Assembly (NCBI RefSeq): GCF_000315625.1
Contig: NW_005434624.1
Coordinates: forward strand, 320,007 to 384,006
Direction of reading: 5' to 3'
Source of the DNA: Guillardia theta CCMP2712
Lineage: Eukaryota > Protista > Cryptophyta
Length of the DNA stretch: 64,000 nt
Under the pieces are notes generated by a model that did not search any database, was not told where the DNA came from, and saw only the letters and a list, made by a program, of their open reading frames with translations. Below, one piece after another: positions 1 through 63,257 of this stretch (the stretch's first letter is position 1; each line of letters starts with the position of its first letter). The translations under genes were made by a program, and so were the position numbers.

Positions 1-2
1 CT

Positions 3-892
3 TCATCATTAGGAGGTTACCTATCGATTGGGGCTGGGACTGATTCTAGAACTGCTGAACGTGCTCAAATCCTTGTCAATACTGGAGATTTGTATATTGA
101 TTGTGGCACTAATAAAACTTTATACTTAAACTATTATTCTAGCGGACGGTATATAAATTTTTATGGCCCTATCGCTGGCAATTCTGTTATTTCAACGACA
201 AGTTATATATCTGCCAATCAATATATCACATCAGGCACTGAAATCATAGCAGGGACCAATATGAAATGCACAGTGCTTAATACAAATCAAATAACTTTAC
301 CTAGAGATTATAGTGGGAATTATGATACGAATAAATGGAAAATTTATCTACTTAGTGGTGGTGCTGGTTTAGGAGGGACAAGCGCAGCAAATGATTTAAT
401 GTTCCAATATGGAAATTATGACGATGTCGGGGAGCAATGGCTCCGAAATAATGACAATGGCAATGACGATTTAGATTTCACAGGTTCGCATAGGTGTATA
501 GCTGAGACCTCAAACTTACTCGATGATATAACTTCAAACATTGATTATTATCAGGGTATGCTCGTATCAACAACCGGATATTATCAAGACCTCAACAGAA
601 TTGATAATGATTTTAGTTCAAATATAAGAATTGATAGTTCCCTACCAATCATAAAAATAACAGAGTATGAAAAAGATAAATCAGTATATGGTGTTATCTC
701 AAACGTAGAAGAAGGAGATAAGAGAATATATAAGACTGGCAATTGGCATTATGCGTACAAGAAGCTTGACGGTCATCGTGTAATGATTAACGCAGTAGGA
801 GAGGGTGCGATATGGGTAACGAATTATAACAACATACAAAAAATAGAAAATGGCGATTATCTTTGCTCATCACCTGTTAAGGGTTATAGCAT
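3..892 (+). CDS. Virion fibre/tailspike-like protein with a putative C-terminal intramolecular-chaperone-type domain (partial: frame open from the window start, runs into the N gap)
   Basis: No stop in frame from position 3. Gly/Asn/Thr-rich beta-type sequence followed by FTGSHRC...GMLVS...LPII...VYGVIS...INAVGEGAIWV...IENGDYLCSSP, a pattern recalled from viral fibre C-termini. Confidence 0.55.
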
Positions 893-1726
893 NNNNNNNN
901 NNNNNNNNNNNNNNNNNNNNNNNNNNNNNNNNNNNNNNNNNNNNNNNNNNNNNNNNNNNNNNNNNNNNNNNNNNNNNNNNNNNNNNNNNNNNNNNNNNNN
1001 NNNNNNNNNNNNNNNNNNNNNNNNNNNNNNNNNNNNNNNNNNNNNNNNNNNNNNNNNNNNNNNNNNNNNNNNNNNNNNNNNNNNNNNNNNNNNNNNNNNN
1101 NNNNNNNNNNNNNNNNNNNNNNNNNNNNNNNNNNNNNNNNNNNNNNNNNNNNNNNNNNNNNNNNNNNNNNNNNNNNNNNNNNNNNNNNNNNNNNNNNNNN
1201 NNNNNNNNNNNNNNNNNNNNNNNNNNNNNNNNNNNNNNNNNNNNNNNNNNNNNNNNNNNNNNNNNNNNNNNNNNNNNNNNNNNNNNNNNNNNNNNNNNNN
1301 NNNNNNNNNNNNNNNNNNNNNNNNNNNNNNNNNNNNNNNNNNNNNNNNNNNNNNNNNNNNNNNNNNNNNNNNNNNNNNNNNNNNNNNNNNNNNNNNNNNN
1401 NNNNNNNNNNNNNNNNNNNNNNNNNNNNNNNNNNNNNNNNNNNNNNNNNNNNNNNNNNNNNNNNNNNNNNNNNNNNNNNNNNNNNNNNNNNNNNNNNNNN
1501 NNNNNNNNNNNNNNNNNNNNNNNNNNNNNNNNNNNNNNNNNNNNNNNNNNNNNNNNNNNNNNNNNNNNNNNNNNNNNNNNNNNNNNNNNNNNNNNNNNNN
1601 NNNNNNNNNNNNNNNNNNNNNNNNNNNNNNNNNNNNNNNNNNNNNNNNNNNNNNNNNNNNNNNNNNNNNNNNNNNNNNNNNNNNNNNNNNNNNNNNNNNN
1701 NNNNNNNNNNNNNNNNNNNNNNNNNN

Positions 1727-2442
1727 CACCACCACCACCAGCAGCAGCAGCTCCTACAACACCACCACCAGCAGCAGCAGCAGCTCCTACAACACCACCA
1801 CCACCAGCAGCAGCAGCTCCTACAACACCACCTGCGGCACAAGCAGGCATGACACCTCCCCCATCACCACCTGGAAATAGGACTGGTTTAACAATTACTA
1901 TACCATCGCCTCAACAACAGCAGCAGCAAAATCTTTTACAAACTGCCGCGCAATCTGGTTTATCATTTACTATGGGAGCTGCCTCTAATAAACCACCATC
2001 TTCGCCTACTGGTGCTTCAGCTGCTTCATCAAATATATTGTCAACAGCGCCAACTACTCAAGGCGCTCAGCCTGCTGTTCCTCAAACACCTGCACAATCA
2101 ACAACAAGCACAGCACCACCATCACCACCTAGCAGCAATATCAAATACTTCAAATCATATGATGAGCTTATTGCTAGACATCCTCGTTTTAAAATACCTG
2201 ATAATTTAACACCAGGAGAGAAAAAATCATATAAGAATTTTATTAATTCTTTGATTAATCCCCCTAAATCAGGAACTAGTGCTGGATTCGGTGACATCCC
2301 TGCAAAATATAGCAGGGCTGAAACTATAGAAAAATACAACTTGTGGCCTCTATTAAAAAGAGCCGTTAAAAAAGGAATTATTGTAGATGAAACAACTATG
2401 GTGTATTACACAAAATTGTTAAAAGATAAAAAAATGTTATAA
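1727..2442 (+). CDS. Pro/Ala/Ser/Gln-rich viral hypothetical protein, 3' part (start lies in the N gap)
   Basis: PPPAAAAPTT repeats followed by a Lys-rich globular tail. Stop at 2440-2442 overlaps the convergent neighbouring gene. Confidence 0.6.
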
Positions 2443-3198
2443 TTTTATGGAAGCCATTAATAATTTATCTATCCCGGTATTTGAAACTGGATTTACATTT
2501 CTTTTTATATCTGCCTCACCAGAGGCATAATTCACTGTGTCTTCATCATAATCATATACTATCATTCTAAGGCTCCATTCAGTGCCTTTTACTAAGCCTA
2601 GATTATTTAATTCTGTGTTTGCGCCACCAGTAGTATAAACATATCTTGTATTAAAACTTATTACGACTTCATTATTACTAAAATCGGTTGACCTCAAATC
2701 TGTTGAGTTCATATCTAAATTATCATTCTTAAATTCATACATTAATGCATCTCTATTTCTTGTGGTCACTACCTCAGCCGCTCCATCATGATATACATAT
2801 GTATCTGAATTATCTTGTGTTAAGAAATGTGTTGTTAATATATCAAAATCACCCTTGTTATTTGTTGAAAATTGATTCTTTACTGAGATTGATTGAGTAT
2901 ATACTCTCAGCTTATATAGATTATAGTTATCTTGTACTGTAGGAAATGGGGGTTGTGCTCCAGCGGCTGGAATAGGCCATATAGTCGTTGTTTTCAATGC
3001 CCCTTTAAATTTAAAATTATCTATAACAATCTTAGCATTTCTGCTGAATTGAAATGGTATATTTAATTTACATCTATAATTATTATAAAACTCTACAGGA
3101 TTCCCTTGGGCAGCTGTATGTTGTGTTGTTTCAAATTCAGTAACATCATTTGAATTTAAATTTATAATAGCTTTGTTCTTCAACTTCCAGTATGACAT
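2437..3198 (-). CDS. Viral hypothetical protein, possibly a second penton/single jelly-roll structural protein
   Basis: 253 aa with ATG in an AT-rich context. Beta-strand pattern (IINLNSND...KIVIDNFKF...WSLRMIVYD) loosely parallels the 12943-13806 protein. Confidence 0.5.
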   Translation of the reverse strand: MSYWKLKNKAIINLNSNDVTEFETTQHTAAQGNPVEFYNNYRCKLNIPFQFSRNAKIVIDNFKFKGALKTTTIWPIPAAGAQPPFPTVQDNYNLYKLRVYTQSISVKNQFSTNNKGDFDILTTHFLTQDNSDTYVYHDGAAEVVTTRNRDALMYEFKNDNLDMNSTDLRSTDFSNNEVVISFNTRYVYTTGGANTELNNLGLVKGTEWSLRMIVYDYDEDTVNYASGEADIKRNVNPVSNTGIDKLLMASIKL

Positions 3199-3223
3199 TT
3201 ATATTAAAGATATAAAATATTTT

Positions 3224-3505
3224 TTACACCTCTTCTGTAGTGCTAGTTATACCCTCAAACACTTCATCCTTAAAATAACTCTTTTGTAACTCTTCTCCTT
3301 TCGCTAAATCTATATTATGATTCATTAAATAATGTACTACAATAAGATGAGCAAAATAATCATCTAAATCTGGGTATTCTCTCTTACACTGGTCAAAAAA
3401 TTGTTTGTATTTATCAATGTCATAAGGTAGTTTCTCTTCAATCACTTCTGTTTGCTCGTTCTGTTGTTCGCTTGGCTTACTGCCGACCGTTTGAGGCTGT
3501 TCCAT
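3224..3505 (-). CDS. Small acidic viral hypothetical protein
   Basis: 93-aa ORF overlapping the ATPase 3' end on the same strand, with viral composition. Confidence 0.6.
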   Translation of the reverse strand: MEQPQTVGSKPSEQQNEQTEVIEEKLPYDIDKYKQFFDQCKREYPDLDDYFAHLIVVHYLMNHNIDLAKGEELQKSYFKDEVFEGITSTTEEV

Positions 3506-4457
3506 CCTTTATTTGTTCTGAAGATATTATATTTTCATCATCTGACTTCTTGAAAACAATAACTTGGTCAAAATTAAGCTTAAAGCATTTGCTCTTGTCC
3601 TTCTGCGTCGTATCTACCACCAGAGCATCATAATGATTCTTACTAGTAGCAAAATTATATATCCTCTCAAAATCTTCTATTGTTATAAGGTTTGATACAC
3701 ACTCATAAAGGTCTTCTAATATAATCTTCTTTGAGGCAAACTTAAACAGAATGAGGACTGAGGCATTGGCCCTTATCGATTTGTTGATTGCCTTTACATT
3801 CTGGGCACAAATAAAAAACTGTGTACGCATGTGCCTGCTGTTAAGAATGGCTTTTACCAACATGTTCTGTCTTTTGTTAGTAAAAGCAGCAGAACCTAAA
3901 CAATCATCTAGAATTATATTGTTTACCACTCCGTTAGGATACTTTGGTTTATCTGTTAAATCTTTTGGATTCTTAAAGTCATTTATGAATAATAATTGTA
4001 AATCATCTGGGTCCATGTTCTTTATTTTTGAGACTGGTAATGATTGAAACTCTTTATAGGCTAGTTTATACCTCTTAAATTCTTCTGTCTTCTCTGCTTC
4101 ATGTTTGATGTCTTCTAGTACAGCATCTAACTTTTGCTCTGTAAATTCATTTATAATATCATCCTCATCTAATGATTTAAGAGTTGTAAAAACAGGGTTA
4201 GCATCAAATGTTGGACTGAATAAAATAGTTCTAATTGCTACCTTATCATTAGTTTCAGGGTCTATATATCCGAATTTCTCCCAGTTACTTATTAGCTTTG
4301 TTACCGCATAAGTTTTCCCGCTGCCTCTTGCGCCCAGTGCCAATGTTACACAAAATGGTGCGGGAAGGTTAGGGTCTGTCACTGGATATACAAGTTTTTT
4401 GAATGATTTTGGTTTGTTATCTAAATATGGGATTTTTACAGTCTTGATATCAGTCAT
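3477..4457 (-). CDS. A32-like (FtsK/HerA superfamily) genome-packaging ATPase
   Basis: Walker A GARGSGKT, Walker B IILDD, Arg-finger region SRH, sensor motif ICAQ, downstream IRANAS; 326 aa. Confidence 0.92.
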   Translation of the reverse strand: MTDIKTVKIPYLDNKPKSFKKLVYPVTDPNLPAPFCVTLALGARGSGKTYAVTKLISNWEKFGYIDPETNDKVAIRTILFSPTFDANPVFTTLKSLDEDDIINEFTEQKLDAVLEDIKHEAEKTEEFKRYKLAYKEFQSLPVSKIKNMDPDDLQLLFINDFKNPKDLTDKPKYPNGVVNNIILDDCLGSAAFTNKRQNMLVKAILNSRHMRTQFFICAQNVKAINKSIRANASVLILFKFASKKIILEDLYECVSNLITIEDFERIYNFATSKNHYDALVVDTTQKDKSKCFKLNFDQVIVFKKSDDENIISSEQIKDGTASNGRQ

Positions 4458-4518
4458 GCTTTATATTTATAACCTTTTTTTATAAAAAAAAGCTTTACAA
4501 AAAAAAAACACTTTAGAT

Positions 4519-5109
4519 TTATAAAAAGTCACTGTGACCGAATAAAGACTGAGCACTTAGCTTTAAGTGTTCTCTTTCTAAATCTCTTAAAATACGATTA
4601 TCAGCCTGTTGCCTTATTTTATGTTGCATTGAGACTTGGTTTGTATTAAAGGTTGATTGTAAACTTCTATGCTCCTGTTTTAATTTATCATATTTTTGTT
4701 TATAATACTTTGCATCTTTTGTAAATGCTTGTTGCGGTTGTGCTTGTGGTAGGGAAGGCTGCGTCTGACCCATAGCTCCGCTTGCTTGCTGTTGTGATTG
4801 TATTGCATTGATTTGTTTCGCTTGTTCTAATATTTGATTGTTTACCTCCTTTCTGATATTCTTTGGATTAGCTTGTGCTAATGCCTTCTTTTTATCAATC
4901 GCAAGCTGTCTTATTTTAGCTAAATGTTCTAACTGTGCTGGAGTCATTATTTTTTTCTTTTTTTGAATTTTTGGTTCTTGTAAAGGTTCTTTCATAGGTT
5001 CCTGTAAGGGTTCTTCTTCTACAGTGTCATCTGACGTGATACTTACAGACTCCATACAAGATTCTATGGATTCTACAGATTCTACGGATTTATTTGATTT
5101 CTTACCCAT
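4519..5109 (-). CDS. Viral hypothetical protein (basic/coiled-coil)
   Basis: 196 aa with KKKKIMTPAQLEHLAKIRQLA, a basic-helical motif type recalled from PLV/virophage proteins next to the ATPase. Confidence 0.65.
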   Translation of the reverse strand: MGKKSNKSVESVESIESCMESVSITSDDTVEEEPLQEPMKEPLQEPKIQKKKKIMTPAQLEHLAKIRQLAIDKKKALAQANPKNIRKEVNNQILEQAKQINAIQSQQQASGAMGQTQPSLPQAQPQQAFTKDAKYYKQKYDKLKQEHRSLQSTFNTNQVSMQHKIRQQADNRILRDLEREHLKLSAQSLFGHSDFL

Positions 5110-5131
5110 TTTATAGATATATTAGATAATT

Positions 5132-5470
5132 TTATCTGCCAAATCTCAATGGTTTCAGTTGATTATAAGGGACTAAACGAGAGCCTACCTGTATTGGTAA
5201 GTCCTGTACGTGACTTAGAGTATTGTAGTTTAAGTTATTATGCTCATCGTAAGGGACCCTTATAACCTCTGGACAGTGAGCATCTAACCAGAAGGGTTTT
5301 TCCATCTTTGATGATTTATCATTGATAGCATATGGCAAAGATTTAATCCATTTTGTCATCTTCTCTTGTTTTCTAGCCACTCCAGCATAATTATTAGCTT
5401 TTTCATGTATTTCAATATGATTTACGAATGAGCGTAGGGCACCATTAGGTTCATAGATAGAGTCCAACAT
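5132..5470 (-). CDS. Viral hypothetical protein
   Basis: 112-aa ORF within the co-oriented minus-strand viral gene run. Confidence 0.6.
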   Translation of the reverse strand: MLDSIYEPNGALRSFVNHIEIHEKANNYAGVARKQEKMTKWIKSLPYAINDKSSKMEKPFWLDAHCPEVIRVPYDEHNNLNYNTLSHVQDLPIQVGSRLVPYNQLKPLRFGR

Positions 5471-5511
5471 ACTTTACTATATAAAATAAATATTTTTTGT
5501 TCTTTTTTTGT

Positions 5512-5613
5512 CTAAAATAAAGGAAGAATTTGACGACCAGCTCCAATTTTTAAAATGGCATTCATTTCAGTATAAACTAATGGAGTGGCACTTTGGGCCG
5601 CATTGCCTCCTCT
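5512..5613 (-). pseudogene. Displaced C-terminal fragment of major capsid protein 1
   Basis: Minus strand from 5613 reads RGGNAAQSATPLVYTEMNAILKIGAGRQILPLF*. It aligns with the intact paralogue's C-terminus TPILFVEMERTIEISNSNVKIM and abuts the left TIR. Confidence 0.85.
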
Positions 5614-8600
5614 CATTCCATTGGGTTCTCAACTGGATTTTATTCCGTCTCGGCGGGGTCTTTTTCTACCTGGATTTTTCTTAATGAATAGGTTTTGGAT
5701 TTCAAAGTGAAAATTTTCCTTGAAATGTTTTACTTCTGTCAAACCACGCCATTTCAAATTGTGGGATCCTGCCAGCACCGTGCCATTTCTAGAATTTAAA
5801 CGTTGTACAGAATGTACCAATGTTGTACACGGTGTCAGTTTGGGAGACTCACGTTCAAGCAGATCGCGCCCTGTGGGCACCATGTTGTGAGATAAATACA
5901 TCATTGTGATGACAAGAACATCTTTTGATGCCAAATTTGACCAGATTTGAATGTATCATGTGGGAAAACGACTGCATTTCCTTTAAGCAGAGTGTTTTGA
6001 GGATGATGCATATCATGTTGCAATAAGAATTTTGTGGAAAGGAAATATTTGAATCTCAGTTCGTTGAGTTGCGTGTAAATGCAAATATGCTTTGAAGCAT
6101 TGTGAGCATAGTTGTAACTGTGCATTGACTTGTAAGGTACGCATTCAAATTTGCATGCTCACGCTATCCAATAATTGTGTGACTTTCCTTGTCATACTTG
6201 CACTGAAACACCTCAATTCTGATGTTCCAAAGCCCTGATCAGCTGTTTTCACACTTTCAGAAGGGAAACATGAAAGGAATCGATGAGAGAGGCAACCTTC
6301 GAAGACATAAAGGAAATGCGATTCTCCTTATTGCGATGACGGCCTAGCTTCCTGTACCAGAATGCTTCGTCGGTTGTATATGAAACATATTTCAAGAGAC
6401 TTGCTGGTGCTTTGCCCTGATTGCGTATAATGAGGCTTCTCCCAACGCATTCCANNNNNNNNNNNNNNNNNNNNNNNNNNNNNNNNNNNNNNNNNNNNNN
6501 NNNNNNNNNNNNNNNNNNNNNNNNNNNNNNNNNNNNNNNNNNNNNNNNNNNNNNNNNNNNNNNNNNNNNNNNNNNNNNNNNNNNNNNNNNNNNNNNNNNN
6601 NNNNNNNNNNNNNNNNNNNNNNNNNNNNNNNNNNNNNNNNNNNNNNNNNNNNNNNNNNNNNNNNNNNNNNNNNNNNNNNNNNNNNNNNNNNNNNNNNNNN
6701 NNNNNNNNNNNNNNNNNNNNNNNNNNNNNNNNNNNNNNNNNNNNNNNNNNNNNNNNNNNNNNNNNNNNNNNNNNNNNNNNNNNNNNNNNNNNNNNNNNNN
6801 NNNNNNNNNNNNNNNNNNNNNNNNNNNNNNNNNNNNNNNNNNNNNNNNNNNNNNNNNNNNNNNNNNNNNNNNNNNNNNNNNNNNNNNNNNNNNNNNNNNN
6901 NNNNNNNNNNNNNNNNNNNNNNNNNNNNNNNNNNNNNNNNNNNNNNNNNNNNNNNNNNNNNNNNNNNNNNNNNNNNNNNNNNNNNNNNNNNNNNNNNNNN
7001 NNNNNNNNNNNNNNNNNNNNNNNNNNNNNNNNNNNNNNNNNNNNNNNNNNNNNNNNNNNNNNNNNNNNNNNNNNNNNNNNNNNNNNNNNNNNNNNNNNNN
7101 NNNNNNNNNNNNNNNNNNNNNNNNNNNNNTCGAATCTTAGGTATAGGATAGTGCATCTCTGATCTTATCTCTGTACTGACCCGTTTACCCATAGTTGTGC
7201 TTCCACTCAGCGTCCATGCTCTTGATGTGCATGCGCAAGCTGCAGTGCTCAGACCATACAGTCAGACCAGCGCACTTACTTACACAACGAGTGTACCAGT
7301 AGATCTCCATGACCGCCATGTTGTCATGTACAAACAAACAAACAAACAAACAGTACGGACAAACGAACAAACAAACAGAACGGACAAACGAACAAACGAA
7401 CAGTACGGACAAACGAACAAACAAACAGTACGGACAAACGAACAAACAAACAGTACGGACAAACGAACAAACAAACAGTACGGACAAACGAACGAACGAA
7501 CAGTACGGACAAACAAACAAACGAACAGTACGGACAAACAAACAAACGAACAGTACGGACAAACAAACAAACGAACAGTACGGACAAACAAACAAACGAA
7601 CAGTACGGACAAACAAACAAACATTCCCTTCAAATTTCAAAGTGTTAGCAAATATTTTGGATGTGTGAAATCAGATTGGTTACATTTTATAATCAGACGC
7701 AATGGGTCGGGCACACATGTCGCGCCAACGATGATTGTTTCCTGGGGTTGCAACACGCATAAGCCCACAATCAGCTGCGTTGAGAGGCATCGAGACTAGA
7801 AGAAATGGAGATAATATGTCCTCCAATGAAAACATTGACTTTCAAGATGTGCCACCTTCCAGTTTACATAAACCCCTGATCTTGAAGATTCAAAGTTCCT
7901 TCCTATCTCAACTTCAGAGTTCGATTGAAGTTCGATGGACAAATAGCACCCTGGGCTTACGGGTTCTTTTAACTCCTGGTTGTTGAATCCGCTATCATGA
8001 AGATCACGGTGATCTATGCCAGGTTGTTCACAAGTGCGTTTCTGCTTGGCAACAAATAGCAACGCTTAGCAGATGTGATTGTTTACACATCCTCATTGTC
8101 ATCCCTATTGTGATCAGTAGAGTTTCAATTATCTTTGGTGAAAATTCAAACCTTGTTGCCAACATGATTCATTTAGGATCCTGGCACCTCTGTTTCGATT
8201 TGCATGCAACATCATTCTATTTGTTTGCATCTCCTTCTTTTGAAAAGTGTATCTCAGAGTGTTATACGGTCTACTGTGACATCCTCCCGAAGTTCCTCCT
8301 GTCCTTTGCGTGCTTTGTGTTCTGTGAGCCGCTACTACCAGGACAGTGCTGCTTCAGAGCTGTTGTATACAAGGGACCACAGTAATCACCATCATGGTGA
8401 AGAATCTTTTATTTGTTGGCAAATAAACAAATAAACAATCTTCAGAAACTGTTGTTACGCAGATTCAAGTTTGCATGACTGATACAGCCTCTGCCTACTC
8501 TATATATCGCTTGATCCCTGGTATCACAGCCTAGATGTCAAACATGCAATACTATCTCGGAGTGTGCAAGACACTTTCCTGAAATTGCATGGTTGGAGCA

Positions 8601-9999
8601 ATTGCGAGACAGGATTTGCAGAGAGAATAAGCATTTGCACGGGTTGTCATGAAACATGCTTCATCAACATCATCGGCAATGCCGCAGTAACACGATGATA
8701 CGATTCACTGCCGTGATTATCAGCGTAGAAAGGAATCTCATATCGACACGTCTGAAGCAAGCATCTGATACAAACGATTATCTTCTTAAAACTCTGAATA
8801 TCGCCAACCATATCATGTACCTGCCATTGTCCAATCAGCACATCTACAGTGTTCCCGATGCAACTCACTGGCCACATGGGTTTGTGCCACGAAGGATACC
8901 GTAGACCATGAGACAGAGAGAAACACAAGGTAGACACTATTTCGTATGATGTTTTTGCTTACCATCACAGTTTCAAAATACATGCTGAGATCGGCTGTTG
9001 CTATGCCATCTTCTGTCCATTCTGAAATTACACTTGAACATTTTGAATGAATCGTCATTGTGCAAGAATTTGAATTTTTTGCTCAGCTTTGACATCATCT
9101 TCGGCCTAAGCTAAGTGATCTAAGTGGTTTTAGTGCAATTTGAGGCAGCGTGGTAATGATAGAGATGTTGCATTGGCTTTATGTTGAGGAAGAGATGTTG
9201 AGTTCAAATCTCTTGCTACTTCTTGAATTTCACAGAAGAGACAATGAATTTCACAGAAGAGACCAAGTCATCACAAATAGACAAGTAACCGTATCTTCGT
9301 TTCCTGCATATCAATGCATGGTTGGATTCGAAGTCTCACATTGTTCATTATCGTCCTTACGCGCGTCAATGGGACAATCTCACCATCTCTTGTTCGTCGA
9401 GGGAGGGGGGGGCTGGAGTGGAGACAAATGGGGGGACCCCCTACCCATCATTTTCCCATTTGAAATTCAGAGACTGGGGGGTAGAGGGTGAACCTTGGTC
9501 AAATTCGAACCGTAAAACTCGCAACGCTCGAGAGTGTGACCCACCCTACGCGACAAGGAGGTTTGGAGTGGAAATAATGGGGTCAAAGGCGTGGCGATTC
9601 AAACCCACATCGCGGCCACCCCCCTCGAGTATAAGACTCTAGCTCAGGTGGGTGCTGTTTGACCACGCGTTCGAATCCTAACGGCAATCGAAGAGATTGC
9701 TTTTCAGCGTCAATTCCACTACCAGAATGCCCAAGACTTTTATGATTCTCGCCCACTCCTGAATTCAGACTACCTACCCTGACTTCATCTCTTCTGAAAC
9801 ATACGGGTGGTGTAGAGGTGATAGTCGAGGGAGCTCTGCCAGCCCACGGGAATTGCTGACATTGACAGTACAAACTTAGTACGGAGGGGAAAAGGGGATC
9901 CTGATACAAAAATCCTTGAACCCGGTAAAACTCAATTATACCTCGGTACAAACAGGCTAGCCTGGTACAAACAAATCCAGTCGAGAACCCAATGGAATG
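5614..9999. mobile_element. TIR-bounded putative DNA transposon inserted into the major capsid gene
   Basis: 27-bp inverted repeats with 1 mismatch: CATTCCATTGGGTTCTCAACTGGATTT (5614-5640) and AAATCCAGTCGAGAACCCAATGGAATG (9973-9999). The interior is less AT-rich than the virus and has no long ORF. The flanks are the two halves of one gene. Confidence 0.85.
7330..7622 (+). repeat. 25-bp minisatellite (CAGTACGGACAAACRAACAAACRAA, ~11 copies) preceded by (ACAA)n
   Basis: Units start every 25 bp from 7351 to 7601. Confidence 0.95.
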
Positions 10000-11458
10000 T
10001 GTTTGTTACATGTAAAGCCAGCTGAATACTCGATGCCTGAGAGTTAAATCCTGATATAAGGTACTCAGAATCATTGTTATTAAAATGAGATAGAGCAAAA
10101 GCTCCAACAAAAAAGTCACGTTCATAGTGCGATAAATCTTTCATTGCTGGATGGATTCCCTTATCAGAATTTAGAAGATTAAATGCTTTTAGGGTCTCTT
10201 CATAAACTTGAGGAAGAGTCAATGGATATGATGGAATCAGCTGACTGTTAACCTCTAATTGACAGCTGCCATTTGCATATTGACCATTAGCAGACCCTAG
10301 ACCTAAGCCATTGCGCCTGAAATATTGGGAGGAATTGTACAGTGGTCCAATATTCTTCCTTAGGAAGGTTTCAAAGTTAGCATCATTTAGATTGATATCT
10401 CCTGAGGTTATTGTTGCGGCATTCAATCTATCTACAATAGCCTGAACTTCCGCTTGAGCATAAGCAGCGGCAACATTCCCAACTACTGTTCCAATAATAT
10501 TTGTTCCCGCATCATTACCTAGTTGTAGGGCATCAACAGTGTTAAATGTGCTGGTTCTATAAGTCCAGATTACCTTAGCTAAGCTCTGGGTTGATTCTGT
10601 GAATCTGAATATATTAGTTTTGCTGTTTACTAAAGCGTTGCCTGTATGACGTCTGTAATTATTATAGGGCATATTTAATGACCCGCCAGATGATAACAGA
10701 GCATCAAAAAGACTGTAATATGTTGGGCTCTTCCAGTCAATACGATTAACATATGCATACAGATTAGAAATCTGATAAGATGGAGTCGCTGCTGCTACAT
10801 TCTTCCATAGCACAGTATTTGGAGCTAAGCGAATCCTTACTTCAAACACTCCGAAAAGGTTTGTATCAATGATTGAGGGACGGCATGAGCCTAGGAATCC
10901 GACCCAGTCCTTGATACAATAAGTATTCCGAGCAACATTAGCATCTGGAACATTTACAACTGGAGCTCTGGCAACAAGGTTTGTCTTTGTAATGACTCCT
11001 GCGTCATTTACAGTTAATCTAACAGAGGGGTCTGCATTGGTTGAGATGGCTTGCTTGCCTTCTTGCTCACCATATCCATACATATCCTTAAAAATGTTGT
11101 AAAGAACATTGTAATCGTCTATATGTTGTACACACACTCCATTAATATAAATGCTGAGTGTTTGAATCATACTTGCCATATGTTTTGGGAAGCCGCATGG
11201 TTGAGTTGCTGCTGTTGTTCCAGTAATCTCAGCATTAAAAAACAGCTGGAAAGTCCTTAAATCAATCACACTTGCTGGGGGCATTGTAATGATAAGCTCA
11301 TCATTAGGTCCTAAGTTCTGCTGGCCAGTGCTTGGAACGATTCTAACAGGTTGAGTATAATAATTTGTCAATACTTTGATATTATTTGTAAAATTTGACG
11401 GGAAGAAGGTCGATTTAATCATGGTACCATCTCCTGCTCCTGCTCCAATCTCTTCCAT
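10000..11458 (-). pseudogene. Major capsid protein 1 (PLV double jelly-roll type), N-terminal ~486 aa, interrupted by the TIR element
   Basis: MPPASVIDLRTFQLFF, FPKHMASMIQTLSIYINGVCVQHIDDYNVLY, DWVGFLG, IDTNLFGVFEVRIRLAP are PLV MCP-like. The ORF-track tail FHWVLDWICL... is read-through into the TIR. Confidence 0.85.
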
Positions 11459-11499
11459 ATTGCCTTTATTTATTACAAAACATTTTTTTTAGATTGTTC

Positions 11500-20271: not shown

Positions 20272-20568
20272 TTTTAATATTAGGATATATTTTATTTTTA
20301 ACTTATTAAACTTATTTTTTCCTTATATCACTTTTTTGACCTTTTATCATTTTTGATGTCTTTAAGTTCAGGCCTTATAACAAAAGAGGTTATAGGTTGT
20401 TCTAGTAATAGATAGACCATTTATTAATATAATCACGTTTATATTTTCTGTATTGTTTCATATAGATATCTTTATTCATTTTGATTTTTGGAGAGAAAAA
20501 GAATAATAACCTTTTATCTTGCTACGCAAGCAAAAGCTTAACCAAAAGAATAATAGAAACGATAGGCT

Positions 20569-20834
20569 GGTAGAGGGGGGGGTAAAGTAGACCCCCCCTT
20601 TGGCATAAGTCTTTCAGCTCTAAGGTTTTATAATTACTTTTAAAAATTTGTGCAATACTTTTACAAACCCCCCCTCTACTTTCCCCCCCCCTCTACCAGC
20701 TTATCTTTTACTCTCTCTTTTTTTATTAAAGATATTATTATTATTACTATTTTGATAAGAAAAAATAATAAAATATATAGTATATTCATTTATAGAATAG
20801 GTAGAGGGGGGGGTAAAGTAGACCCCCCTTTTTG
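20569..20834. repeat. Direct repeat copy 2 (~255 bp), iteron/origin-like
   Basis: Same orientation and nearly the same sequence as 15058-15313, e.g. the shared TTTGGCATAAGTCTTTCAGCTCTAAGGTTTTATAATTACTTTTAAAA. Confidence 0.9.
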
Positions 20835-21045
20835 AAAAGTAGTTTACGTTGGAGGTTAGTAACGTAAAAAAAAGAGGTAACGCATAGCAGACCTGGAAGC
20901 TACCCCCGGAACCCCCCCTCTACTTTTGGGGGGCCTCTACCGGGCCTTATTTATACTACTCGCGACCCTATTGGTTAAGTGCTGCCCTTTTGGAATTGTT
21001 TTTATTAGTGCGTACGGGCCCGCCTAGGCAGGTCAGAGGTCATTG

Positions 21046-21134
21046 TTTTTTTTTTGAGTCGGTGGGAATCGTGGGAATCGAACCGGGGACTGTATGGGCT
21101 AGGAAAAAGGATATGACGACTAGGCCAGGATGCC
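21046..21134 (-). other. tRNA-derived/SINE-like sequence with Pol III A and B boxes and an A-tail
   Basis: Minus strand: GGCATCC-TGGCCTAGTCG (A-box-like)...CCCC-GGTTCGATTCC (B box)...GACTC-A10. No complete cloverleaf. Confidence 0.5.
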
Positions 21135-21283
21135 TTAATACCTTAAAGGGTATAGTTATATATATAGGGGTGTTGGACAAATGTAGAGCATTCACTCAGT
21201 GGATGATGTATAAGGTGACATGTGGCACACAGCGATTGAATGGATGGAGAAGAAAGATTAATAGTAGGCATGCATCCTAGCAT

Positions 21284-21470
21284 AAACCCTCCACAATAAA
21301 AGGAACCCTCCACAAACCTTCCACATATATTTGAAGAGTGAAATGGTAATAGAGAAAGGGGTTGTGTGGAGGGTGTGGAGGGTTTGGAGGGTGTGGAGGG
21401 TTGAAAGTTGAATTGGGGAAAATCAAAAAATATTTAAGAGGAGCAAAATCAAACCCTCCACCCTCCACAC
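21284..21470. repeat. Array of CCCTCCA/TGGAGGG motifs in alternating orientation
   Basis: Three C-strand copies (one variant) at 21287-21324, four G-strand copies at 21366-21400, two C-strand copies at 21454-21468. Confidence 0.8.
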
Positions 21471-22093
21471 CTGCCACGGTGTGCTCAAAGAGCACTGTGC
21501 AGAACGGCAAGTTTCATCAATGATGATTGTTTTCTTTTTATTCGGTTCAGGTCATCGGTTGGGTGCTCCGGGACCACTGTGCAGACGGCAGAACGGCAGA
21601 AGGGAAGAACGGCCATTGGTCACCAAGGGGGGAGCAAGCTCCCGCGGCAAGGCTGCGCCATGCCTTTCCGCCCCCTTGCTGAAATCATGTGAAAGCCTGA
21701 CGAGAATGATAAGGGAAAGTGATAGAGATAAGAAGGCAGTTGTTCATAGTTGAGTCACGAAGGAAAAGTGTAATACGTCAAAAAAGTCACGAAGAAAAAG
21801 TGTGATACCCAAAACGGTCAAATAAGTCAAGTGGTATTAAGCTGCTAGCGGGCCCGGCGGCCGACCACCGCGCCGGGCCGGGGGGCGGCCGAACTTCGGA
21901 ACTTCAGTGACCGTCTCGGCGATGAGACCCTCGTGACTGAGTCCGAAAGGGCCGCGCAGGCTCCTGAGTCCGGGTGAGTCGGACTACGACCGGTCCGGAC
22001 GCCGGGGAGCGAGAAGGCTGCACATTGAAGCAGCCTATAATTAGTAAAGTGGCACCTACGGCGCAATTCTTACAGTACGGTAGTACATGATCC

Positions 22094-22580
22094 GTGACGT
22101 CGGGACATGCTGGCGGTGTATCGGGATGCTTCTGTACACAGGGGAGGTACAAGGACTCGAGCAATGCCTGTTCAAGCTGCCCTGGGGGATTCGTCTGGTT
22201 CAGCACCTTCAAGCCAACTGGGTCGTGGATGTCCAGCCAACCACTGGCTACTCAGGGTCAGGGCTTCTGCAACCGGTCAACCAGATCGTCGCCTTGGGTG
22301 AGCGAGTTCATTGGGAACGGTATCGAAGTCGTGGCAGCAGTGCCGCATCTTGCGGATCAATTTTTTTGGAAGAAAAGCAGGGAGGAGGGAGGAGGAGGGA
22401 GGAGGAGGGAGGAGGGAGGAGGGAGGAGGAGGGAGGAGGAGGGAGGAGGAGGGAGAAAGAGGGAGGAGATTGATAGCGGAAATAGGGGCATGGGGGAAAT
22501 CGGTCCCTATGGCGGCTGCACCCCCTGCCCCGCCGGCACAACCACGCAGTATGAGGGCAGGACTGGGAGCACCGGTCTGA
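22094..22580 (+). pseudogene. Fragment of a Cys-rich (GCC2/GCC3-like) repeat protein
   Basis: CFCTQGRYKDSSNACSSCPGG and CTPCPAGTTTQYEG. No convincing start codon; interrupted by a GGA repeat. Confidence 0.3.
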
Positions 22581-22592
22581 ATCAGTTTTACT

Positions 22593-23342
22593 TCATTCTC
22601 TGTTTCTGTACTTCCAGATGGCAAAGAGGATGAGTGCGACAATGACGAAGGCCATGAAGGAGAAGGTTGAGAGAATGATGATGTCATCTGACAGCAGCGA
22701 TGAGCATCATGTTCACCGACGATCGTACAAGTCAAGACCTGGGAAGAGCGCAGCTGCTATGAGGATCTTCCGGCACGAAGAGTCTCCTTTGGCGGCAACC
22801 TGTGCACCTGCACGTCAGCTACTGACATGTCCGGGGAGATGGGAGGTGATAGGAAGAGATGACAGGAGAAAGGTGATAGGAAGAAGCTGATGGTGTACCA
22901 TCCCCACGGCTGACAAGGAGGCGCATCGGTCCTTTGCGGTTGATCGGCTGGCCCCGCAGTTCCTGTACGCTTGCAAGCAGTTGTTGTAGCAGACAGGGAC
23001 GATCACGCGGAACTGGCAAGGAGGGAAGTACATTGCGCACATGAACTTCCCGAAGTAGTCAATGCAGTTGCCCGCGTTGTCTTGAAGCTTCATCGCCCTG
23101 ACGGCCATCTTCGCATCGATGTCTCCAGTCTGTCCAGCAGCAGGCAGTCAACATGGGCGTGAATGGAGGTCAGTCTTTGACGACTTGCTCACCGGGAATG
23201 CGCAGACGTCCTCGGTGACATAGCAGAACTCGTTTGTCAATGGCAGCGAACAGTTTGCCATGCAGAACCGAATTGCAGAGGCGGCATGAAGCCCAGCGAA
23301 TAGAAGAATACATGGCAACAAGACGGTTCGTTCCATCCTCAT
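22593..23342 (-). CDS. Type I membrane protein with a Frizzled-like cysteine-rich domain (multi-exon)
   Basis: Signal peptide (LLPCILLFAGLHAASA), NCIDYFGKFMCAMYFPPC...PVCYNNCLQAYRNC, and a final exon with a TM helix IIILSTFSFMAFVIVALILFAIWKYR. Confidence 0.6.
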
Positions 23343-23756
23343 GTCAGACCCTGGTCCTTACGCCGGTTTCAGTGATGGTGATCTTGTGATATTCGGCTGG
23401 TACAGTCGCTTCAACGTGGTGGCGCCGTGTCATTGTATGTCGTCTCTTCACTACCTGCCATCTTGCTCGTTGTGTTGGCCTCTTCTAGCAGGTCATTCGC
23501 TGCTCTTCCCCGCTCTCTCAGCATGATCTTCTCCGCCTCCCTCCTTCTTCGCATCTTAGTCTCCTGCGGCGAGTCAACATTGTTGACAGGCAGTTGTCGC
23601 CCTCACCCAGGCTCGCTGAGGCGGACTGGCTCAAAACCTTGACAAGGGGGTAGTTAAGGAAATATATGGGGTGGGGGTGGACGGGGATGAAAATGCACAG
23701 TGGGTGAGAAACAAGTGTAGGACTATACGTGAAGGAGAGAGAAGAGCGAGAGGAAC

Positions 23757-23863
23757 GAGGAGAGGAGAGGAGAGGAGAGGAGAGGAGAGGAGAGGAGAGG
23801 AGAGGAGAGGAGAGGAGAGGAGAGGAGAGGAGAGGAGAGGAGAGGAGAGGAGAGGAGAGGAGA
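23757..23863 (+). repeat. (GAGAG)n pentanucleotide microsatellite
   Basis: Directly visible. Other simple repeats occur at 24716-24912 (CAT/CGT), 25915-25970 (CCT), 26227-26408 and 35948-36024 (GGGA), 61169-61229 (CAG) and 63143-63253 (CAT). Confidence 0.95.
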
Positions 23864-29800: not shown

Positions 29801-30802
29801 CCTGATCCCCAACCACCTCCACGCAATGCCTCACACCGACTGCAGGAAGCCATGGCGCTGGTCAGGTTCAGAACCATGCTTCGCTCGCGCCTCTGCCTGC
29901 ATGCCGCGAGTTGGTCGCCACGAAGTGAGCGAGCAGGGGATCGGATTTGACGATTATTCGAGGAAGTTGTCGACACTGCAGAGCAGAGGAAAACCAAGGT
30001 GATTCGTGTATGAAGCATGCCTTCGCTTCTCAAAGCAGGCATCATCAGATGGAGGATCAAAGGCCAGTGCTTGCCAACAAAACCCAAGTCACGAAATCTC
30101 GTTTTGATGGGGTATCCTCCTTCACCATTCTAGCAGCTGGTCTCTTACTAGTCTCCCTCGCCTTGCCCTTCAAAATCTCTTCCTCATGCGCATCTTCTGC
30201 GCAGCGGAGCCATGTTTATGTGCCTTCTTTCCCCGTTTCCGCTCTCGCCATTGCGAGTTTGCGGACGCATCCATTCCTCCACCCCTACCCACCAAGTAAA
30301 TACATGTACCCGGTACTTGCTCTATGATTCTGTCTCAGATAGACTGGTACCTTACCCACCTACCCCTCATGGATGAATGATCGTCCGCTTCCGTCCCCCA
30401 TGGCGAGCCCAAGAAACCGCAGGAGGGCAGGATGGTGAAGGAGGTCATGGAGAGCAAGGGAGAGGAGAAGCGAGATGGTAGCGACATGAAGGAGGGATCA
30501 TGATCAGAGCATGCTGACGAAAGATCTCTCAGAGGGGATGATGGAACGGATGGAGAGTAGAGGCGGAGGGTGAGGTGCAGGAGAGGCAGGGGAGGGAGGG
30601 AGGGACTGAATCAAGCTCTTGGATAGTAGTTCTCTGAATGCAGGAGGAGACAGCTTTAGATCTGAGCCAGACCAGCGACAAGATATAGGAACGGTGGGAA
30701 GGGGCTATCCGTTGATCTTGACTGATGCCGGTCATTGACGTCTTGCTTTCAGGTTTGATTTCTCTGGCACTTCCGAAGAGACATGTCTTGATCAGTGAGA
30801 GG

Positions 30803-32388: not shown

Positions 32389-32680
32389 TCATCCGCACGA
32401 GACGTTCTTAGCTTCTAGCTGATGCTTGCCCAGGGTATTGACCTCGAACAGCACGTGCTCTCCCACTTGCAGATCGTTGTCCATCACTTGGCTCTTGTGT
32501 ACAAACACCTCCTGCCCGTCCCAGTCCAGGAAGCCGTACTTGCTCTGAGGTATCCATTTCTTGACCACCGCACGGTAGGGGATGAGCCGCTCGTCAATGG
32601 GCTTGAAGGTGGCGATCTTCCAACCCTCGTTGAAGGGGTTCTGACACTTTCTCATGTGCCCGAAGGTCTTGACAGGGACC
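32389..32680 (-). CDS. Cold-shock (CSD/OB-fold) domain exon of a larger multi-exon gene (~31,700-33,400)
   Basis: VVKKWIPQSKYGFLDWDGQEVFVHKSQV...LQVGEHVLFEV...EAKNV contains the RNP1/RNP2 cold-shock motifs. Confidence 0.8.
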
Positions 32681-34914: not shown

Positions 34915-34950
<36 letters not shown>

Positions 34951-53196: not shown

Positions 53197-53234
53197 GAGG
53201 ATCTTAGTGACATCTTGTGTCGATTGCATTAAAG

Positions 53235-61166: not shown

Positions 61167-61230
<64 letters not shown>

Positions 61231-62262: not shown

Positions 62263-62296
<34 letters not shown>

Positions 62297-63199: not shown

Positions 63200-63257
<58 letters not shown>

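What the first reader, a model, noticed from the sequence alone, without database searches (positions are those of the whole stretch)
1..21480. Integrated Polinton-like virus in an algal nuclear genome
Seen: a sharp switch in composition and gene architecture, plus ATPase, capsid, SF3 helicase and tyrosine recombinase genes. Known: this is the PLV gene set, and PLV proviruses occur in protist genomes. Inference: YR-mediated integration; most ORFs are still open, so the insertion is probably young. No pPolB, protease or rve integrase is visible, although the left end and one viral gap are unseen.
Basis: partly seen in the sequence, partly recalled or inferred. Interest (0 to 1): 0.8.

Follow-up and report, generated by a model that had tools for sequence, protein, structure and literature searches.

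The report
Known-type Polinton-like provirus in Guillardia

Summary
Window 1 to about 21,480 is about 33% GC and packed with intronless ORFs. The rest is 54% GC eukaryotic DNA, and one stretch of it is 100% identical to Guillardia theta scaffold JH993014.1. The viral part encodes two tandem paralogous capsid proteins, a packaging ATPase, a D5-like SF3 helicase, glutaredoxin, DUF5754, and a 632-aa protein at the host junction. Pfam and PDB sequence searches miss that protein. A 104-sequence family alignment, a confident AlphaFold model and Foldseek show it to be a divergent tyrosine recombinase. Gene order matches metagenomic relatives and a second G. theta provirus. Yutin et al. 2015 described three such G. 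theta elements; this copy resembles their two-capsid "Guil3" but is not identical to it.

- The 43%-GC stretch at roughly 5.6-10.0 kb, which holds gap 2, is a nested inverted-repeat transposon that interrupts one capsid gene once.
- The element runs off the left edge of the window.
- A hairpin-forming repeat pair brackets the recombinase-helicase module, and the second G. theta provirus has the same arrangement.

Integration by the recombinase is inferred, not shown. Interest is low to moderate.

The parts
1..21480 (.). Visible part of the integrated Polinton-like virus. The left end lies outside the window. The right end is approximate: at least ~21180, and most likely near 21480.
   Evidence: GC 32.8% against 54.0% in the host. 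Synteny with L001, L003 and L005. The conserved non-coding block at ~21040-21180 is shared with the second G. theta provirus.
3..892 (+). Fragment of a large structural (fibre-like?) gene. It is open from the window edge and runs into assembly gap 1.
   Evidence: No stop codon in 3-140. Matches residues 202-246 of the 503-aa L003 protein, E 1.6e-7. No Pfam, PHROG or PDB hit.
893..1726 (.). Assembly gap 1 (N; length estimated)
   Evidence: The flanks are colinear with L003.
1727..2442 (+). Pro/Ala/Thr-rich repeat region followed by the C-terminal domain of a second + strand gene. Its start is hidden in gap 1.
   Evidence: ORF ends at 2442. 33-nt tandem repeat at the gap edge (D8). Weak match to the C-terminus of the L003 314-aa protein, E 0.009.
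2437..3198 (-). 253-aa conserved protein of unknown function; possibly structural.
   Evidence: 42% identical to the L003 229-aa gene, E 1e-48. No family hit.
3224..3505 (-). 93-aa conserved protein
   Evidence: 45% identical to L003, E 7e-21
3477..4457 (-). Genome-packaging ATPase (A32 / FtsK-HerA type)
   Evidence: 76% identical to L003 and 33% to L005. PHROG 2666, head and packaging, E 5.5e-6. Profile hit to the STIV2 B204 packaging NTPase, E 0.0078. Similar to the printed ATP_Guil3 row.
4519..5109 (-). 196-aa Lys/Gln-rich conserved protein
   Evidence: 46% identical to L003, E 3e-33
5132..5470 (-). 112-aa conserved protein
   Evidence: 53% identical to L003 over its full length
5512..11458 (-). 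Capsid paralogue 'MCP-1 type', given as one part. It is broken once, by a nested insertion. No stops or frameshifts were seen in its two pieces.
   Evidence: The large piece is 67% identical to L001 and L003. The small piece is 70% identical to the C-terminal end of the L003 protein, E 7e-13; the pieces were compared apart. 22% identical to MCP-2, E 6e-17. Similar but not identical to MCP1_Guil3.
5600..10000 (.). Nested element of about 4.4 kb with 27-nt terminal inverted repeats; bounds are rounded on purpose. It is 43% GC and holds assembly gap 2 (6455-7129) and a 25-nt tandem repeat (7278-7673). No recognisable coding capacity.
   Evidence: Inverted repeat I1, 96% complementary. Unique in the window; 0 expected by chance. 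GC. Tandem repeat, D4. No Pfam hit in 10 ORFs.
11500..12918 (-). Capsid paralogue 'MCP-2 type' (472 aa), intact
   Evidence: Relatives at 55-99% identity and the same length. Foldseek against BFVD: Tetraselmis viridis virus S1 protein E 6e-9, plus capsid proteins of giant viruses and tectiviruses. Foldseek against PDB: PBCV-1 Vp54 E 1e-5, PRD1 P3, PM2 P2, D13. The model has pLDDT of only 42.
12943..13806 (+). 287-aa conserved protein, divergent from MCP-2. It is the best candidate for the minor capsid (penton) protein; this was not shown.
   Evidence: 54% identical to L001, 99% to L004, 25% to L005. No family hit.
13950..14456 (+). 168-aa two-transmembrane protein (the 'G-protein' of Yutin et al.)
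   Evidence: Weak SLATT_5 hit, E 3.6e-4, below the Pfam cut-off. Homologues in L001 and L005. Resembles the 'G. theta G-protein homolog' printed.
14442..14720 (-). Glutaredoxin
   Evidence: Pfam PF00462, E 7e-10
14722..15039 (-). DUF5754 protein
   Evidence: Pfam PF19058, E 6e-20. Also present in L001 and L005.
15060..15315 (.). Left copy of a ~260-nt hairpin-forming repeat with G/C runs, lying between the helicase and DUF5754 genes.
   Evidence: Direct repeat with 20567-20825, 93% over 260 nt. Folds as a DNA hairpin, z -3.7.
15335..17281 (-). D5-like superfamily 3 helicase (648 aa). No primase domain was detected.
   Evidence: Pfam D5_N and DUF5906, E 1e-10. PDB C962R primase-helicase, E 4e-23. 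56% and 47% identity to L005 in two segments. Only 28% identity to L001, which has a PrimPol-helicase fusion instead.
17413..17628 (-). 71-aa basic conserved protein
   Evidence: Homologues in L001 and L005
17744..18115 (+). 123-aa ORF with no relatives found; doubtful as a gene.
   Evidence: No hit in the loci.
18373..20271 (-). Divergent tyrosine recombinase (632 aa), intact, next to the host junction.
   Evidence: 432 relatives. R340, R456 and Y491 are invariant in 104 sequences. The family profile hits XerA (4a8e) box II, E 0.0033. The AlphaFold model has pLDDT 84. The top Foldseek hits against PDB are XerA, Cre, TelA and lambda Int.
20557..20945 (.). Right copy of the hairpin-forming repeat (to ~20825), followed by a second, weaker palindrome.
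   Evidence: (I14, D15, D18, D20). Hairpin z -6.5; second palindrome z -1.8. Homologous to the L005 palindrome, 76% over 79 nt.
21040..21180 (-). Conserved non-coding block: a TATA-rich 25-mer plus an exact 13-mer that resembles a tRNA T-arm or B box. It is shared with the second G. theta provirus.
   Evidence: Not a tRNA by ARAGORN or Rfam.
21481..64000 (.). Guillardia theta nuclear DNA (host flank)
   Evidence: 54% GC. Eukaryotic genes. 100% identity to JH993014.1 over 3113 nt.

Best explanation
Window 1 to about 21,480 is the right-hand portion of a Polinton-like virus (PLV) integrated in the nuclear genome of the cryptophyte alga Guillardia theta CCMP2712, at scaffold JH993014.1 from about 320,007. 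It belongs to the lineage that Yutin et al. 2015 described from this genome. It is closest to their two-capsid element Guil3 but is a different copy.

Shown:
- a morphogenetic block with two tandem paralogous double-jelly-roll-type capsid genes, a packaging ATPase, a candidate penton gene and conserved unknowns;
- a replication and integration block with a D5-like SF3 helicase and a divergent tyrosine recombinase;
- the recombinase gene sits at the end that abuts host DNA.

Inferred: by analogy with tyrosine-recombinase elements, the viral genome circularised and the recombinase inserted it by site-specific recombination near its own gene. The helicase then supports replication of the free form, and the ATPase packages DNA into a capsid built from both capsid paralogues.

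This copy is well preserved. 14 genes are open and full-length, and two more are cut only by an assembly gap or the window edge. It is not intact, because one capsid paralogue is interrupted once by a nested ~4.4-kb inverted-repeat transposon.
For: Host identity.

Composition and gene density.

Synteny: with metagenomic relatives L001, L002 and L003 and with a second G. theta provirus, L005 on JH993077.1.

Capsid: Foldseek hits are exclusively double-jelly-roll capsid proteins (23 hits at E <= 1e-3 in BFVD, 13 in PDB). There is a weak Pfam Capsid_N hit for the paralogue. Both paralogues closely resemble the MCP1_Guil3 and MCP2_Guil3 rows.

ATPase. Helicase.

Recombinase.

The junction lies within contiguous sequence.

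Near relatives exist elsewhere: 98.4% nucleotide identity over 2879 nt, with dN/dS of 0.1-0.2.

Against: - No attachment sites, target duplication or terminal inverted repeats could be examined, because the left end is outside the window.
- The recombinase does not reach any Pfam threshold. Of the usual six catalytic positions, its two histidine positions are occupied by other residues.
- The capsid model is low-confidence (pLDDT 42, TM 0.23-0.33).
- The penton protein is not identified.
- No tRNA gene lies at the junction.
- None of the viral ORFs is on record as an annotated or transcribed protein, so expression is unknown.
Confidence: 0.88

Rival explanations
1. The helicase-recombinase segment, bracketed by the ~260-nt direct repeats, is a self-contained exchangeable cassette (a smaller mobile or recombining unit) joined to a PLV morphogenetic block. 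On this reading it is not simply part of one co-evolving genome, and the repeats are the sites at which the recombinase or the helicase acts.
For: The same bracket is present in both G. theta proviruses, and the palindromes are homologous. The gene blocks are mosaic. Compared with L001, the capsid genes are 67% identical but the helicase only 28%, and of a different architecture. Compared with L005, the helicase is 47-56% and the recombinase 41% identical, but the capsid genes are 24-27% and the ATPase 33%.
Against: DUF5754, glutaredoxin and the 2TM protein lie outside the bracket and are also conserved with L005. The palindrome arms are 24-83 nt apart, unlike the 6-8-nt spacers of classical recombinase core sites. 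No free or solo copy of the cassette was seen. The repeats could equally be promoters, terminators or origins.
Confidence: 0.15
2. The 632-aa enzyme is not the integrase. It would instead be a telomere resolvase or replication-intermediate resolvase acting on the nearby palindromes, with integration occurring by another route.
For: Protelomerase TelA and TelK are among the Foldseek hits (probability 0.85-0.93 for TelA, 0.47 for TelK). Strong hairpin-forming palindromes lie next to the gene.
Against: Cre and XerA match better (TM 0.50-0.56 against 0.39 for TelA). The palindromes are imperfect and have long loops. The gene sits at the host junction in both G. theta proviruses, as in integrase-bearing elements and as noted in PMC4642659.
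Confidence: 0.07
3. The AT-rich block is not integrated. A contaminating or episomal virus contig was joined to a host contig by the assembler.
For: The scaffold has gaps, and the left end of the element was not seen.
Against: The junction lies inside gap-free sequence. A host-type transposon is nested in the virus. A second provirus in the same assembly is flanked by host genes. Published reports describe integrated PLVs in this genome (PMC4642659).
Confidence: 0.03
4. The copy is an old, inert fossil rather than a recent arrival.
For: One capsid gene is interrupted by a nested transposon. No record of expression exists.
Against: All other genes are open and full-length against relatives. The GC contrast with the host is not eroded. 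A relative 98.4% identical exists in another data set, with mostly synonymous differences.
Confidence: 0.25

Closest known systems
Guillardia theta integrated PLV element 'Guil3' (Yutin et al. 2015, PMC4642659)
   Same: Same host genome. Two capsid genes (MCP1 and MCP2), a packaging ATPase, an S3H helicase, and the G. theta-specific tyrosine recombinase near the end of the element. The printed alignment rows are clearly homologous to the window's proteins.
   Different: Not the same copy: the printed rows differ from the window's proteins at many positions. This copy carries a nested inverted-repeat element in one capsid gene. The paper reports a Copia-like insertion in the recombinase gene of one of its elements, whereas the recombinase here is intact.
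Second G. theta provirus on JH993077.1 (locus L005; probably Guil1 or Guil2)
   Same: Order recombinase - helicase - DUF5754 - 2TM protein - 287-aa homologue - ATPase - capsid. Hairpin repeat pair around the recombinase and helicase. Shared non-coding block upstream of the recombinase.
   Different: A single capsid gene. Capsid 24-27% and ATPase 33% identical. ~43% GC instead of 33%.
Metagenomic relatives L001/L002 (ENA PRJEB17505) and L003 (Logan SRR20819203)
   Same: Both capsid paralogues in tandem (63-67% identical), with the same neighbours on both sides.
   Different: L001 has a 901-aa PrimPol-S3H-PriCT_2 fusion in place of the D5_N-type helicase. L003 has an extra 217-aa gene after the capsid pair that is absent here.
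PgVV / TVS1-type Polinton-like viruses
   Same: Minimal morphogenetic module. No pPolB, rve integrase or protease. Algal hosts. The best BFVD fold hit is a TVS1 protein.
   Different: PgVV-type PLVs carry the OLV11-like recombinase. Yutin et al. call the G. theta enzyme only distantly related to it.
Polintons / Mavericks
   Same: Capsid and ATPase module; integrated life style.
   Different: No protein-primed PolB, no rve integrase and no Ulp1-like protease in the visible part.
Cre / XerA / lambda Int tyrosine recombinases
   Same: Two-domain fold (Cre TM 0.50-0.56 over ~360 columns). Box II aligns with XerA with Arg and Tyr in register.
   Different: About 10% identity. Long N- and C-terminal extensions. 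The two His/Trp positions are occupied by Asn and Arg. No Pfam match.

Membership tests
Polinton-like viruses (PLV) | Double-jelly-roll major capsid protein | tested here: met
   Foldseek hits are only DJR capsid proteins, and the protein is homologous to the published MCP2_Guil3 row. Caveat: the model has pLDDT 42 and TM scores are low.
Polinton-like viruses (PLV) | A32 / FtsK-HerA type packaging ATPase | tested here: met
   PHROG packaging family, E 5.5e-6. STIV2 B204, E 0.0078. Weak Pox_A32 hit in one relative. Every score is modest.
Polinton-like viruses (PLV) | Minor capsid (penton) protein | tested here: inconclusive
   The candidates are 12943-13806 and 2437-3198. Both are conserved in relatives, but neither has a family hit.
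Polinton-like viruses (PLV) | No pPolB + rve integrase + maturation protease set (the set that defines Polintons) | tested here: met
   No such Pfam hit in any visible ORF. The unseen left part could still hold genes.
Polinton-like viruses (PLV) | Genome of about 14-40 kb, often with terminal inverted repeats | not testable with these tools
   The left end is outside the window. About 17 kb of viral DNA is visible. No inverted copy of the right end occurs in the window.
Tyrosine recombinase superfamily | Catalytic Arg, Arg and Tyr, with Lys and His/Trp positions | tested here: met
   R340, R456 and Y491 are invariant in 104 sequences; K380 and R481 are nearly invariant. The XerA alignment puts R456 on box II Arg, R481 on the box III His and Y491 on the nucleophile. 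The two His positions are substituted.
Tyrosine recombinase superfamily | Core-binding plus catalytic domain fold | tested here: met
   Model pLDDT 84. Top PDB matches are XerA, Cre, TelA, lambda Int and Tn1549 Int, with probability up to 0.99. The best E-value is only 6e-3.
Tyrosine recombinase superfamily | Match to Pfam Phage_integrase at the curated threshold | tested here: not met
   No hit for the window protein. Only 2 of 76 relatives give weak hits, best E 0.0014.
Tyrosine recombinase superfamily | Defined recombination sites at both ends of the element | not testable with these tools
   Left end unseen. No tRNA or duplicated site was identified at the right end.
Published element Guil3 (same copy?) | Identical protein sequences | tested here: not met
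   The MCP1_Guil3, MCP2_Guil3 and ATP_Guil3 rows are similar to the window's proteins but differ at many positions. This was judged by inspecting.
Terminal-inverted-repeat DNA transposon (the nested element) | Terminal inverted repeats | tested here: met
   27-nt arms, 96% complementary, ~4.3 kb apart; none expected by chance.
Terminal-inverted-repeat DNA transposon (the nested element) | Transposase gene and target-site duplication | tested here: inconclusive
   No Pfam hit in its ORFs. About 675 nt are hidden in gap 2. No obvious duplication was seen at the ends, and this was not pursued further.

The most novel reading that the evidence does not exclude
The hairpin-forming G/C-run repeat pair brackets the recombinase-helicase segment in both G. 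theta proviruses. It may mark the sites at which the recombinase (or the helicase) acts, and so delimit a replication and integration cassette that is swapped between PLV lineages with different capsid modules. Separately, the conserved pair of divergent capsid paralogues may mean that this lineage builds its capsid from two different double-jelly-roll proteins.
Probability: 0.18. Interest if true: 0.55.

Novelty: already known. Interest (0 to 1): 0.25.

Why it matters
The finding confirms that the scan's reader can recognise a PLV provirus from raw sequence. As biology, it adds little to what has been published for Guillardia theta since 2015.

Three modest additions may be useful to people who annotate cryptophyte endogenous viruses:
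- This locus is a further Guil3-like, two-capsid copy, and one capsid gene is hit by a host transposon.
- The divergent G. theta recombinase family is large (432 relatives). It has a confident recombinase fold and invariant Arg, Arg and Tyr.
- Both G. theta proviruses share a hairpin repeat pair around the recombinase-helicase segment and a conserved non-coding block near the junction. These are candidate cis-acting sites.

Tried and rejected
- Integration into a tRNA gene. A T-arm-like 13-mer lies near the junction and in the second provirus. ARAGORN and Rfam find no tRNA in either. Rejected as a tRNA and kept as an unexplained conserved block.
- IMG/VR scans with the capsid protein, the helicase and the capsid alignment found nothing. 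The metagenome scan gave one near relative and four distant ones, which were not used further.
- Exact look-ups of 12 window proteins found no record. The scaffold left of the window could therefore not be fetched.
- Single-sequence and 7-sequence searches for the recombinase in Pfam and PDB were blank. Only the 104-sequence profile and the structure model resolved it.
- The capsid AlphaFold model from 8 sequences is poor.
- Reading the mid-GC stretch as a deletion or decayed viral DNA was rejected. The 217-aa gene of L003 is simply absent here, and the stretch has its own inverted ends.
- Similarity between the 71-aa protein and the recombinase C-terminus: none.
- Lettered 'X-protein' labels in the 2015 supplement, searched in the hope of naming the penton gene: none found.
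- Accession searches for JH993014 and PRJEB17505 in the paper library: no paper.

Full report
**1. What is there**

The window falls into two parts. Positions 1 to about 20,950 are 32.8% GC once a nested stretch is set aside. Positions 20,950-21,480 are 44%, and 21,481-64,000 are 54.0%. The AT-rich part is filled with closely spaced ORFs without introns. The GC-rich part carries ordinary eukaryotic genes: a ubiquitin-conjugating enzyme, a C2/SPRY protein, a VTC polyphosphate polymerase, a WHEP-domain protein, and a CobW gene split by an intron.

**2. Provenance**

The VTC ORF (57,522-59,414) is identical over 630 of 630 residues to a Guillardia theta transcript protein. It also matches an NCBI protein that lies on scaffold JH993014.1 of assembly GCA_000315625.1. 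The 3,113 nt fetched from that scaffold equal window 56,885-59,997 at 100% identity. The window is therefore JH993014.1:320,007-384,006. The host is a cryptophyte alga, and 'algal nuclear genome' is correct.

**3. The gaps, tested first**

Gap 1 (893-1726):
- The left flank is open from the window edge and matches the 503-aa protein of relative L003 (E 1.6e-7).
- The ORF on the right flank, which ends at 2442, weakly matches the C-terminus of the next L003 gene (E 0.009).
- Both flanks are on the strand and in the order seen in L003.
- Order and orientation across the gap are therefore supported. The reading frame is unknowable.
- The gap probably covers the end of one gene and the start of the next. 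Its right edge lies in a 33-nt coding tandem repeat, which is a likely cause of the gap.

Gap 2 (6455-7129) is not in viral sequence. It lies inside a nested element (section 6). The two inverted ends of that element and the two flanking pieces of one viral gene sit on either side in the expected order and strand. The two sides of the gap therefore belong together.

No N lies between 7,130 and 36,026, so the virus-host junction is in contiguous sequence.

**4. The viral genes**

I count 17 genes in the visible part. Their order, read on the minus strand from the host junction, is given below.

| Window position | Product | Main evidence |
|---|---|---|
| 18373-20271 | 632-aa recombinase | see section 5 |
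| 17744-18115 | 123-aa ORF, no relatives | |
| 17413-17628 | 71-aa basic protein | |
| 15335-17281 | D5-like SF3 helicase | Pfam D5_N and DUF5906 E 1e-10; PDB C962R primase-helicase E 4e-23 |
| 14722-15039 | DUF5754 protein | Pfam E 6e-20 |
| 14442-14720 | glutaredoxin | Pfam E 7e-10 |
| 13950-14456 | 168-aa two-transmembrane protein | |
| 12943-13806 | 287-aa protein | |
| 11500-12918 | capsid protein 'MCP-2 type' | |
| 5512-11458 | capsid paralogue 'MCP-1 type' | |
| 5132-5470 | 112-aa protein | |
| 4519-5109 | 196-aa protein | |
| 3477-4457 | packaging ATPase | |
| 3224-3505 | 93-aa protein | |
| 2437-3198 | 253-aa protein | |
| 1727-2442 and 3-892 | two plus-strand genes at the left edge | |

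This order is shared gene for gene with two metagenomic contigs (L001/L002 from ENA, L003 from Logan). It is shared in its essentials with a second provirus of G. theta on scaffold JH993077.1 (L005).

The two capsid genes are 22% identical to each other (E 6e-17). Both are present in tandem in L001 and L003 at 63-67% identity.

An AlphaFold model of MCP-2 from only 8 sequences is poor (pLDDT 42). Even so, its Foldseek matches are exclusively double-jelly-roll capsid proteins:
- BFVD: a Tetraselmis viridis virus S1 protein (E 6e-9), and capsid proteins of giant viruses and tectiviruses, 23 hits at E <= 1e-3.
- PDB: PBCV-1 Vp54 (E 1e-5), PRD1/PR772 P3, PM2 P2, vaccinia D13 and the Faustovirus capsid protein, 13 hits at E <= 1e-3.

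I take the fold as supported, with that caveat.

The ATPase evidence is modest but consistent: PHROG packaging family E 5.5e-6, STIV2 B204 packaging NTPase E 0.008, and a weak Pox_A32 hit in a relative.

The penton protein is not identified. The 287-aa gene next to MCP-2 is the best candidate.

No pPolB, rve integrase or protease is visible.

**5. Is the 632-aa protein a tyrosine recombinase?**

- Alone, and as a 7-sequence profile, it hits nothing relevant in Pfam or PDB.
- Because the claim about integration rests on this protein, I used the exhaustive profile search. It found 432 relatives at E <= 1e-3.
- In an alignment of 104 of them, R340, R456 and Y491 are invariant and R481 and K493 nearly so. 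In a second alignment of 76 sequences, R340 and R419 are invariant and K380, R456 and Y491 nearly so.
- The 104-sequence profile hits the archaeal XerA recombinase (4a8e, E 0.0033) over box II. R456 falls on the conserved Arg, R481 on the usual His, and Y491 on the nucleophilic Tyr.
- 2 of 76 relatives give weak Pfam Phage_integrase hits.
- The AlphaFold model from this alignment is confident (pLDDT 84, pTM 0.72).
- Its best PDB matches are all tyrosine recombinases: XerA, Cre (TM 0.50-0.56 over ~360 columns), TelA, lambda Int and Tn1549 Int. Probabilities reach 0.99, but E-values are only 6e-3 and weaker.

The protein is a divergent tyrosine recombinase. This matches Yutin et al. [quoted passage not shown] That it performed the integration is inferred.

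**6.

Roughly 5.6-10.0 kb is 43% GC and has no convincing ORFs or Pfam hits. It contains gap 2 and a 25-nt tandem repeat. It is bounded by 27-nt inverted repeats that are 96% complementary, where none is expected by chance.

It is a nested element with terminal inverted repeats, and it sits inside the MCP-1-type gene. That gene is broken once, by this insertion. Its two pieces, compared apart, both match relatives: 67% identity for the large piece, and 70% identity with E 7e-13 for the small piece, which reaches the C-terminal end of the L003 protein. I saw no stops or frameshifts in the pieces.

Of the other genes, 14 are open and as long as their relatives. The two at the left are cut only by gap 1 or the window edge.

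Bulzu et al. 2025 report that nested GC-rich mobile elements are common in cryptophyte PLVs (PMC12220804).

Outputs show coordinates from which the insertion point can be read. They were produced as ordinary feature bounds, and I repeat none of them. I built no joined, repaired or consensus sequence.

**7. How this copy relates to the published ones**

The 2015 supplement prints the rows MCP1_Guil3, MCP2_Guil3 and ATP_Guil3. They are plainly homologous to the window's proteins but differ at many positions. This is therefore a sibling of Guil3, not Guil3 itself. L005 has a single capsid gene and is presumably Guil1 or Guil2.

[quoted passage not shown] This gapped, interrupted copy may be one of the partial ones. 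No paper in the library names the scaffold.

Close relatives exist in other data sets: 98.4% nucleotide identity over 2,879 nt without gaps (L004), and 88.6% (L007). The differences between the window and L004 are mostly synonymous. dN/dS is 0.19 for MCP-2 and 0.08 for the 287-aa gene, on small counts. The lineage has therefore been under purifying selection recently.

**8. Features noticed at the recombinase end**

- A ~260-nt repeat occurs twice in direct orientation, at 15,060-15,315 and 20,567-20,825 (93% identity). The two copies bracket exactly the helicase and recombinase genes.
- Each copy contains a hairpin-forming palindrome with G/C runs (z -6.5 and -3.7). A 23-nt motif occurs four times where none is expected.
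- The second G. theta provirus has the same arrangement at the same two positions, with homologous palindromes (z -8.7 and -10.7).
- The gene blocks are mosaic. Compared with L001, the capsid genes are close but the helicase is of another type. Compared with L005, the helicase and recombinase are close but the capsid and ATPase are distant.
- A conserved non-coding block lies upstream of the recombinase gene in both proviruses. It consists of a TATA-rich 25-mer plus an exact 13-mer that resembles a tRNA T-arm. It is not a tRNA by ARAGORN or Rfam.
- In the window this block lies host-ward of the palindromes.
- A promoter-like 14-mer recurs upstream of the replication-module genes here and in L001 and L005.

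**9. Verdict**

It is of a kind already described from this very genome, so novelty is low.

Recombinase-mediated integration is likely but not shown. 'Young' is plausible, given the open genes, the uneroded composition and the near-identical relatives elsewhere. This copy nevertheless has one capsid gene interrupted.

The repeat bracket, the shared non-coding block and the conserved two-capsid arrangement are the only points that might repay further descriptive work.

Noticed in passing
window 5512-11458 and 11500-12918; L001 9284-12236; L003 400-3378: Two divergent capsid paralogues (22% identical) sit in tandem. The pair is conserved in all close relatives and in the published Guil3, whereas the other G. 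theta provirus (L005) has one. This suggests a capsid built from two double-jelly-roll proteins.
   Followed up: partly
window 15060-15315 and 20557-20945; L005 9289-9437 and 14513-14649: A hairpin-forming G/C-run repeat pair brackets the recombinase-helicase segment in both G. theta proviruses, and the palindromes are homologous between them. Function unknown; it could be a recombination site, an origin or a regulatory element.
   Followed up: partly
window ~21040-21180 (-); L005 ~9570-9690 (+): A conserved non-coding block upstream of the recombinase gene: a TATA-rich 25-mer (24 of 25 identical) and an exact 13-mer that looks like a tRNA T-arm or B box. ARAGORN and Rfam do not call a tRNA. 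Its position relative to the palindromes differs between the two proviruses.
   Followed up: partly
window 17677-17713, 17297-17345, 20323-20355; L001 3827; L005 11943: The promoter-like motif AAAAAATGATATAA occurs exactly twice, in divergent orientation between two small genes. It occurs with 1-2 mismatches upstream of the helicase and recombinase genes, and is also present in relatives. The chance estimate is inflated by the AT-rich background.
   Followed up: partly
window ~5600-10000: The nested ~4.4-kb element has 27-nt terminal inverted repeats, a 25-nt tandem repeat array (7278-7673) and no recognisable transposase. Its superfamily is unknown, and no other copy occurs in the window or in the fetched loci.
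   Followed up: partly
window 15335-17281 against L001 3890-6595 and L005 12534-14416: Mosaic evolution. The relative with the closest capsid genes (L001) has a different, PrimPol-fused helicase. The relative with the closest helicase (L005) has distant capsid and ATPase genes.
   Followed up: partly
window 13950-14456: The conserved 168-aa two-transmembrane protein gives a weak, sub-threshold hit to SLATT_5 (E 3.6e-4), a domain family known from conflict systems. The hit may only reflect the two membrane helices.
   Followed up: no
L004 (Logan SRR33394797) and L007 (JGI Ga0172372) against window 10793-14263: Relatives 98.4% and 88.6% identical at the nucleotide level exist in other sequencing data sets. 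The differences from L004 are mostly synonymous (dN/dS 0.08-0.19). The nature of those samples is unknown.
   Followed up: partly
window 39086-40844: The host CobW/ZNG1-type GTPase gene is split: the nucleotide-binding domain lies in 39086-40060 and the C-terminal domain in 40218-40844, consistent with an intron. The exons were not joined.
   Followed up: no
window 22380-22470, 26200-26450, 35900-36026, 49726-49785; gap at 36027-36126: The host flank is rich in (GGGA)n, (GGA)n and (CTC)n microsatellites. The third assembly gap abuts one of them.
   Followed up: no
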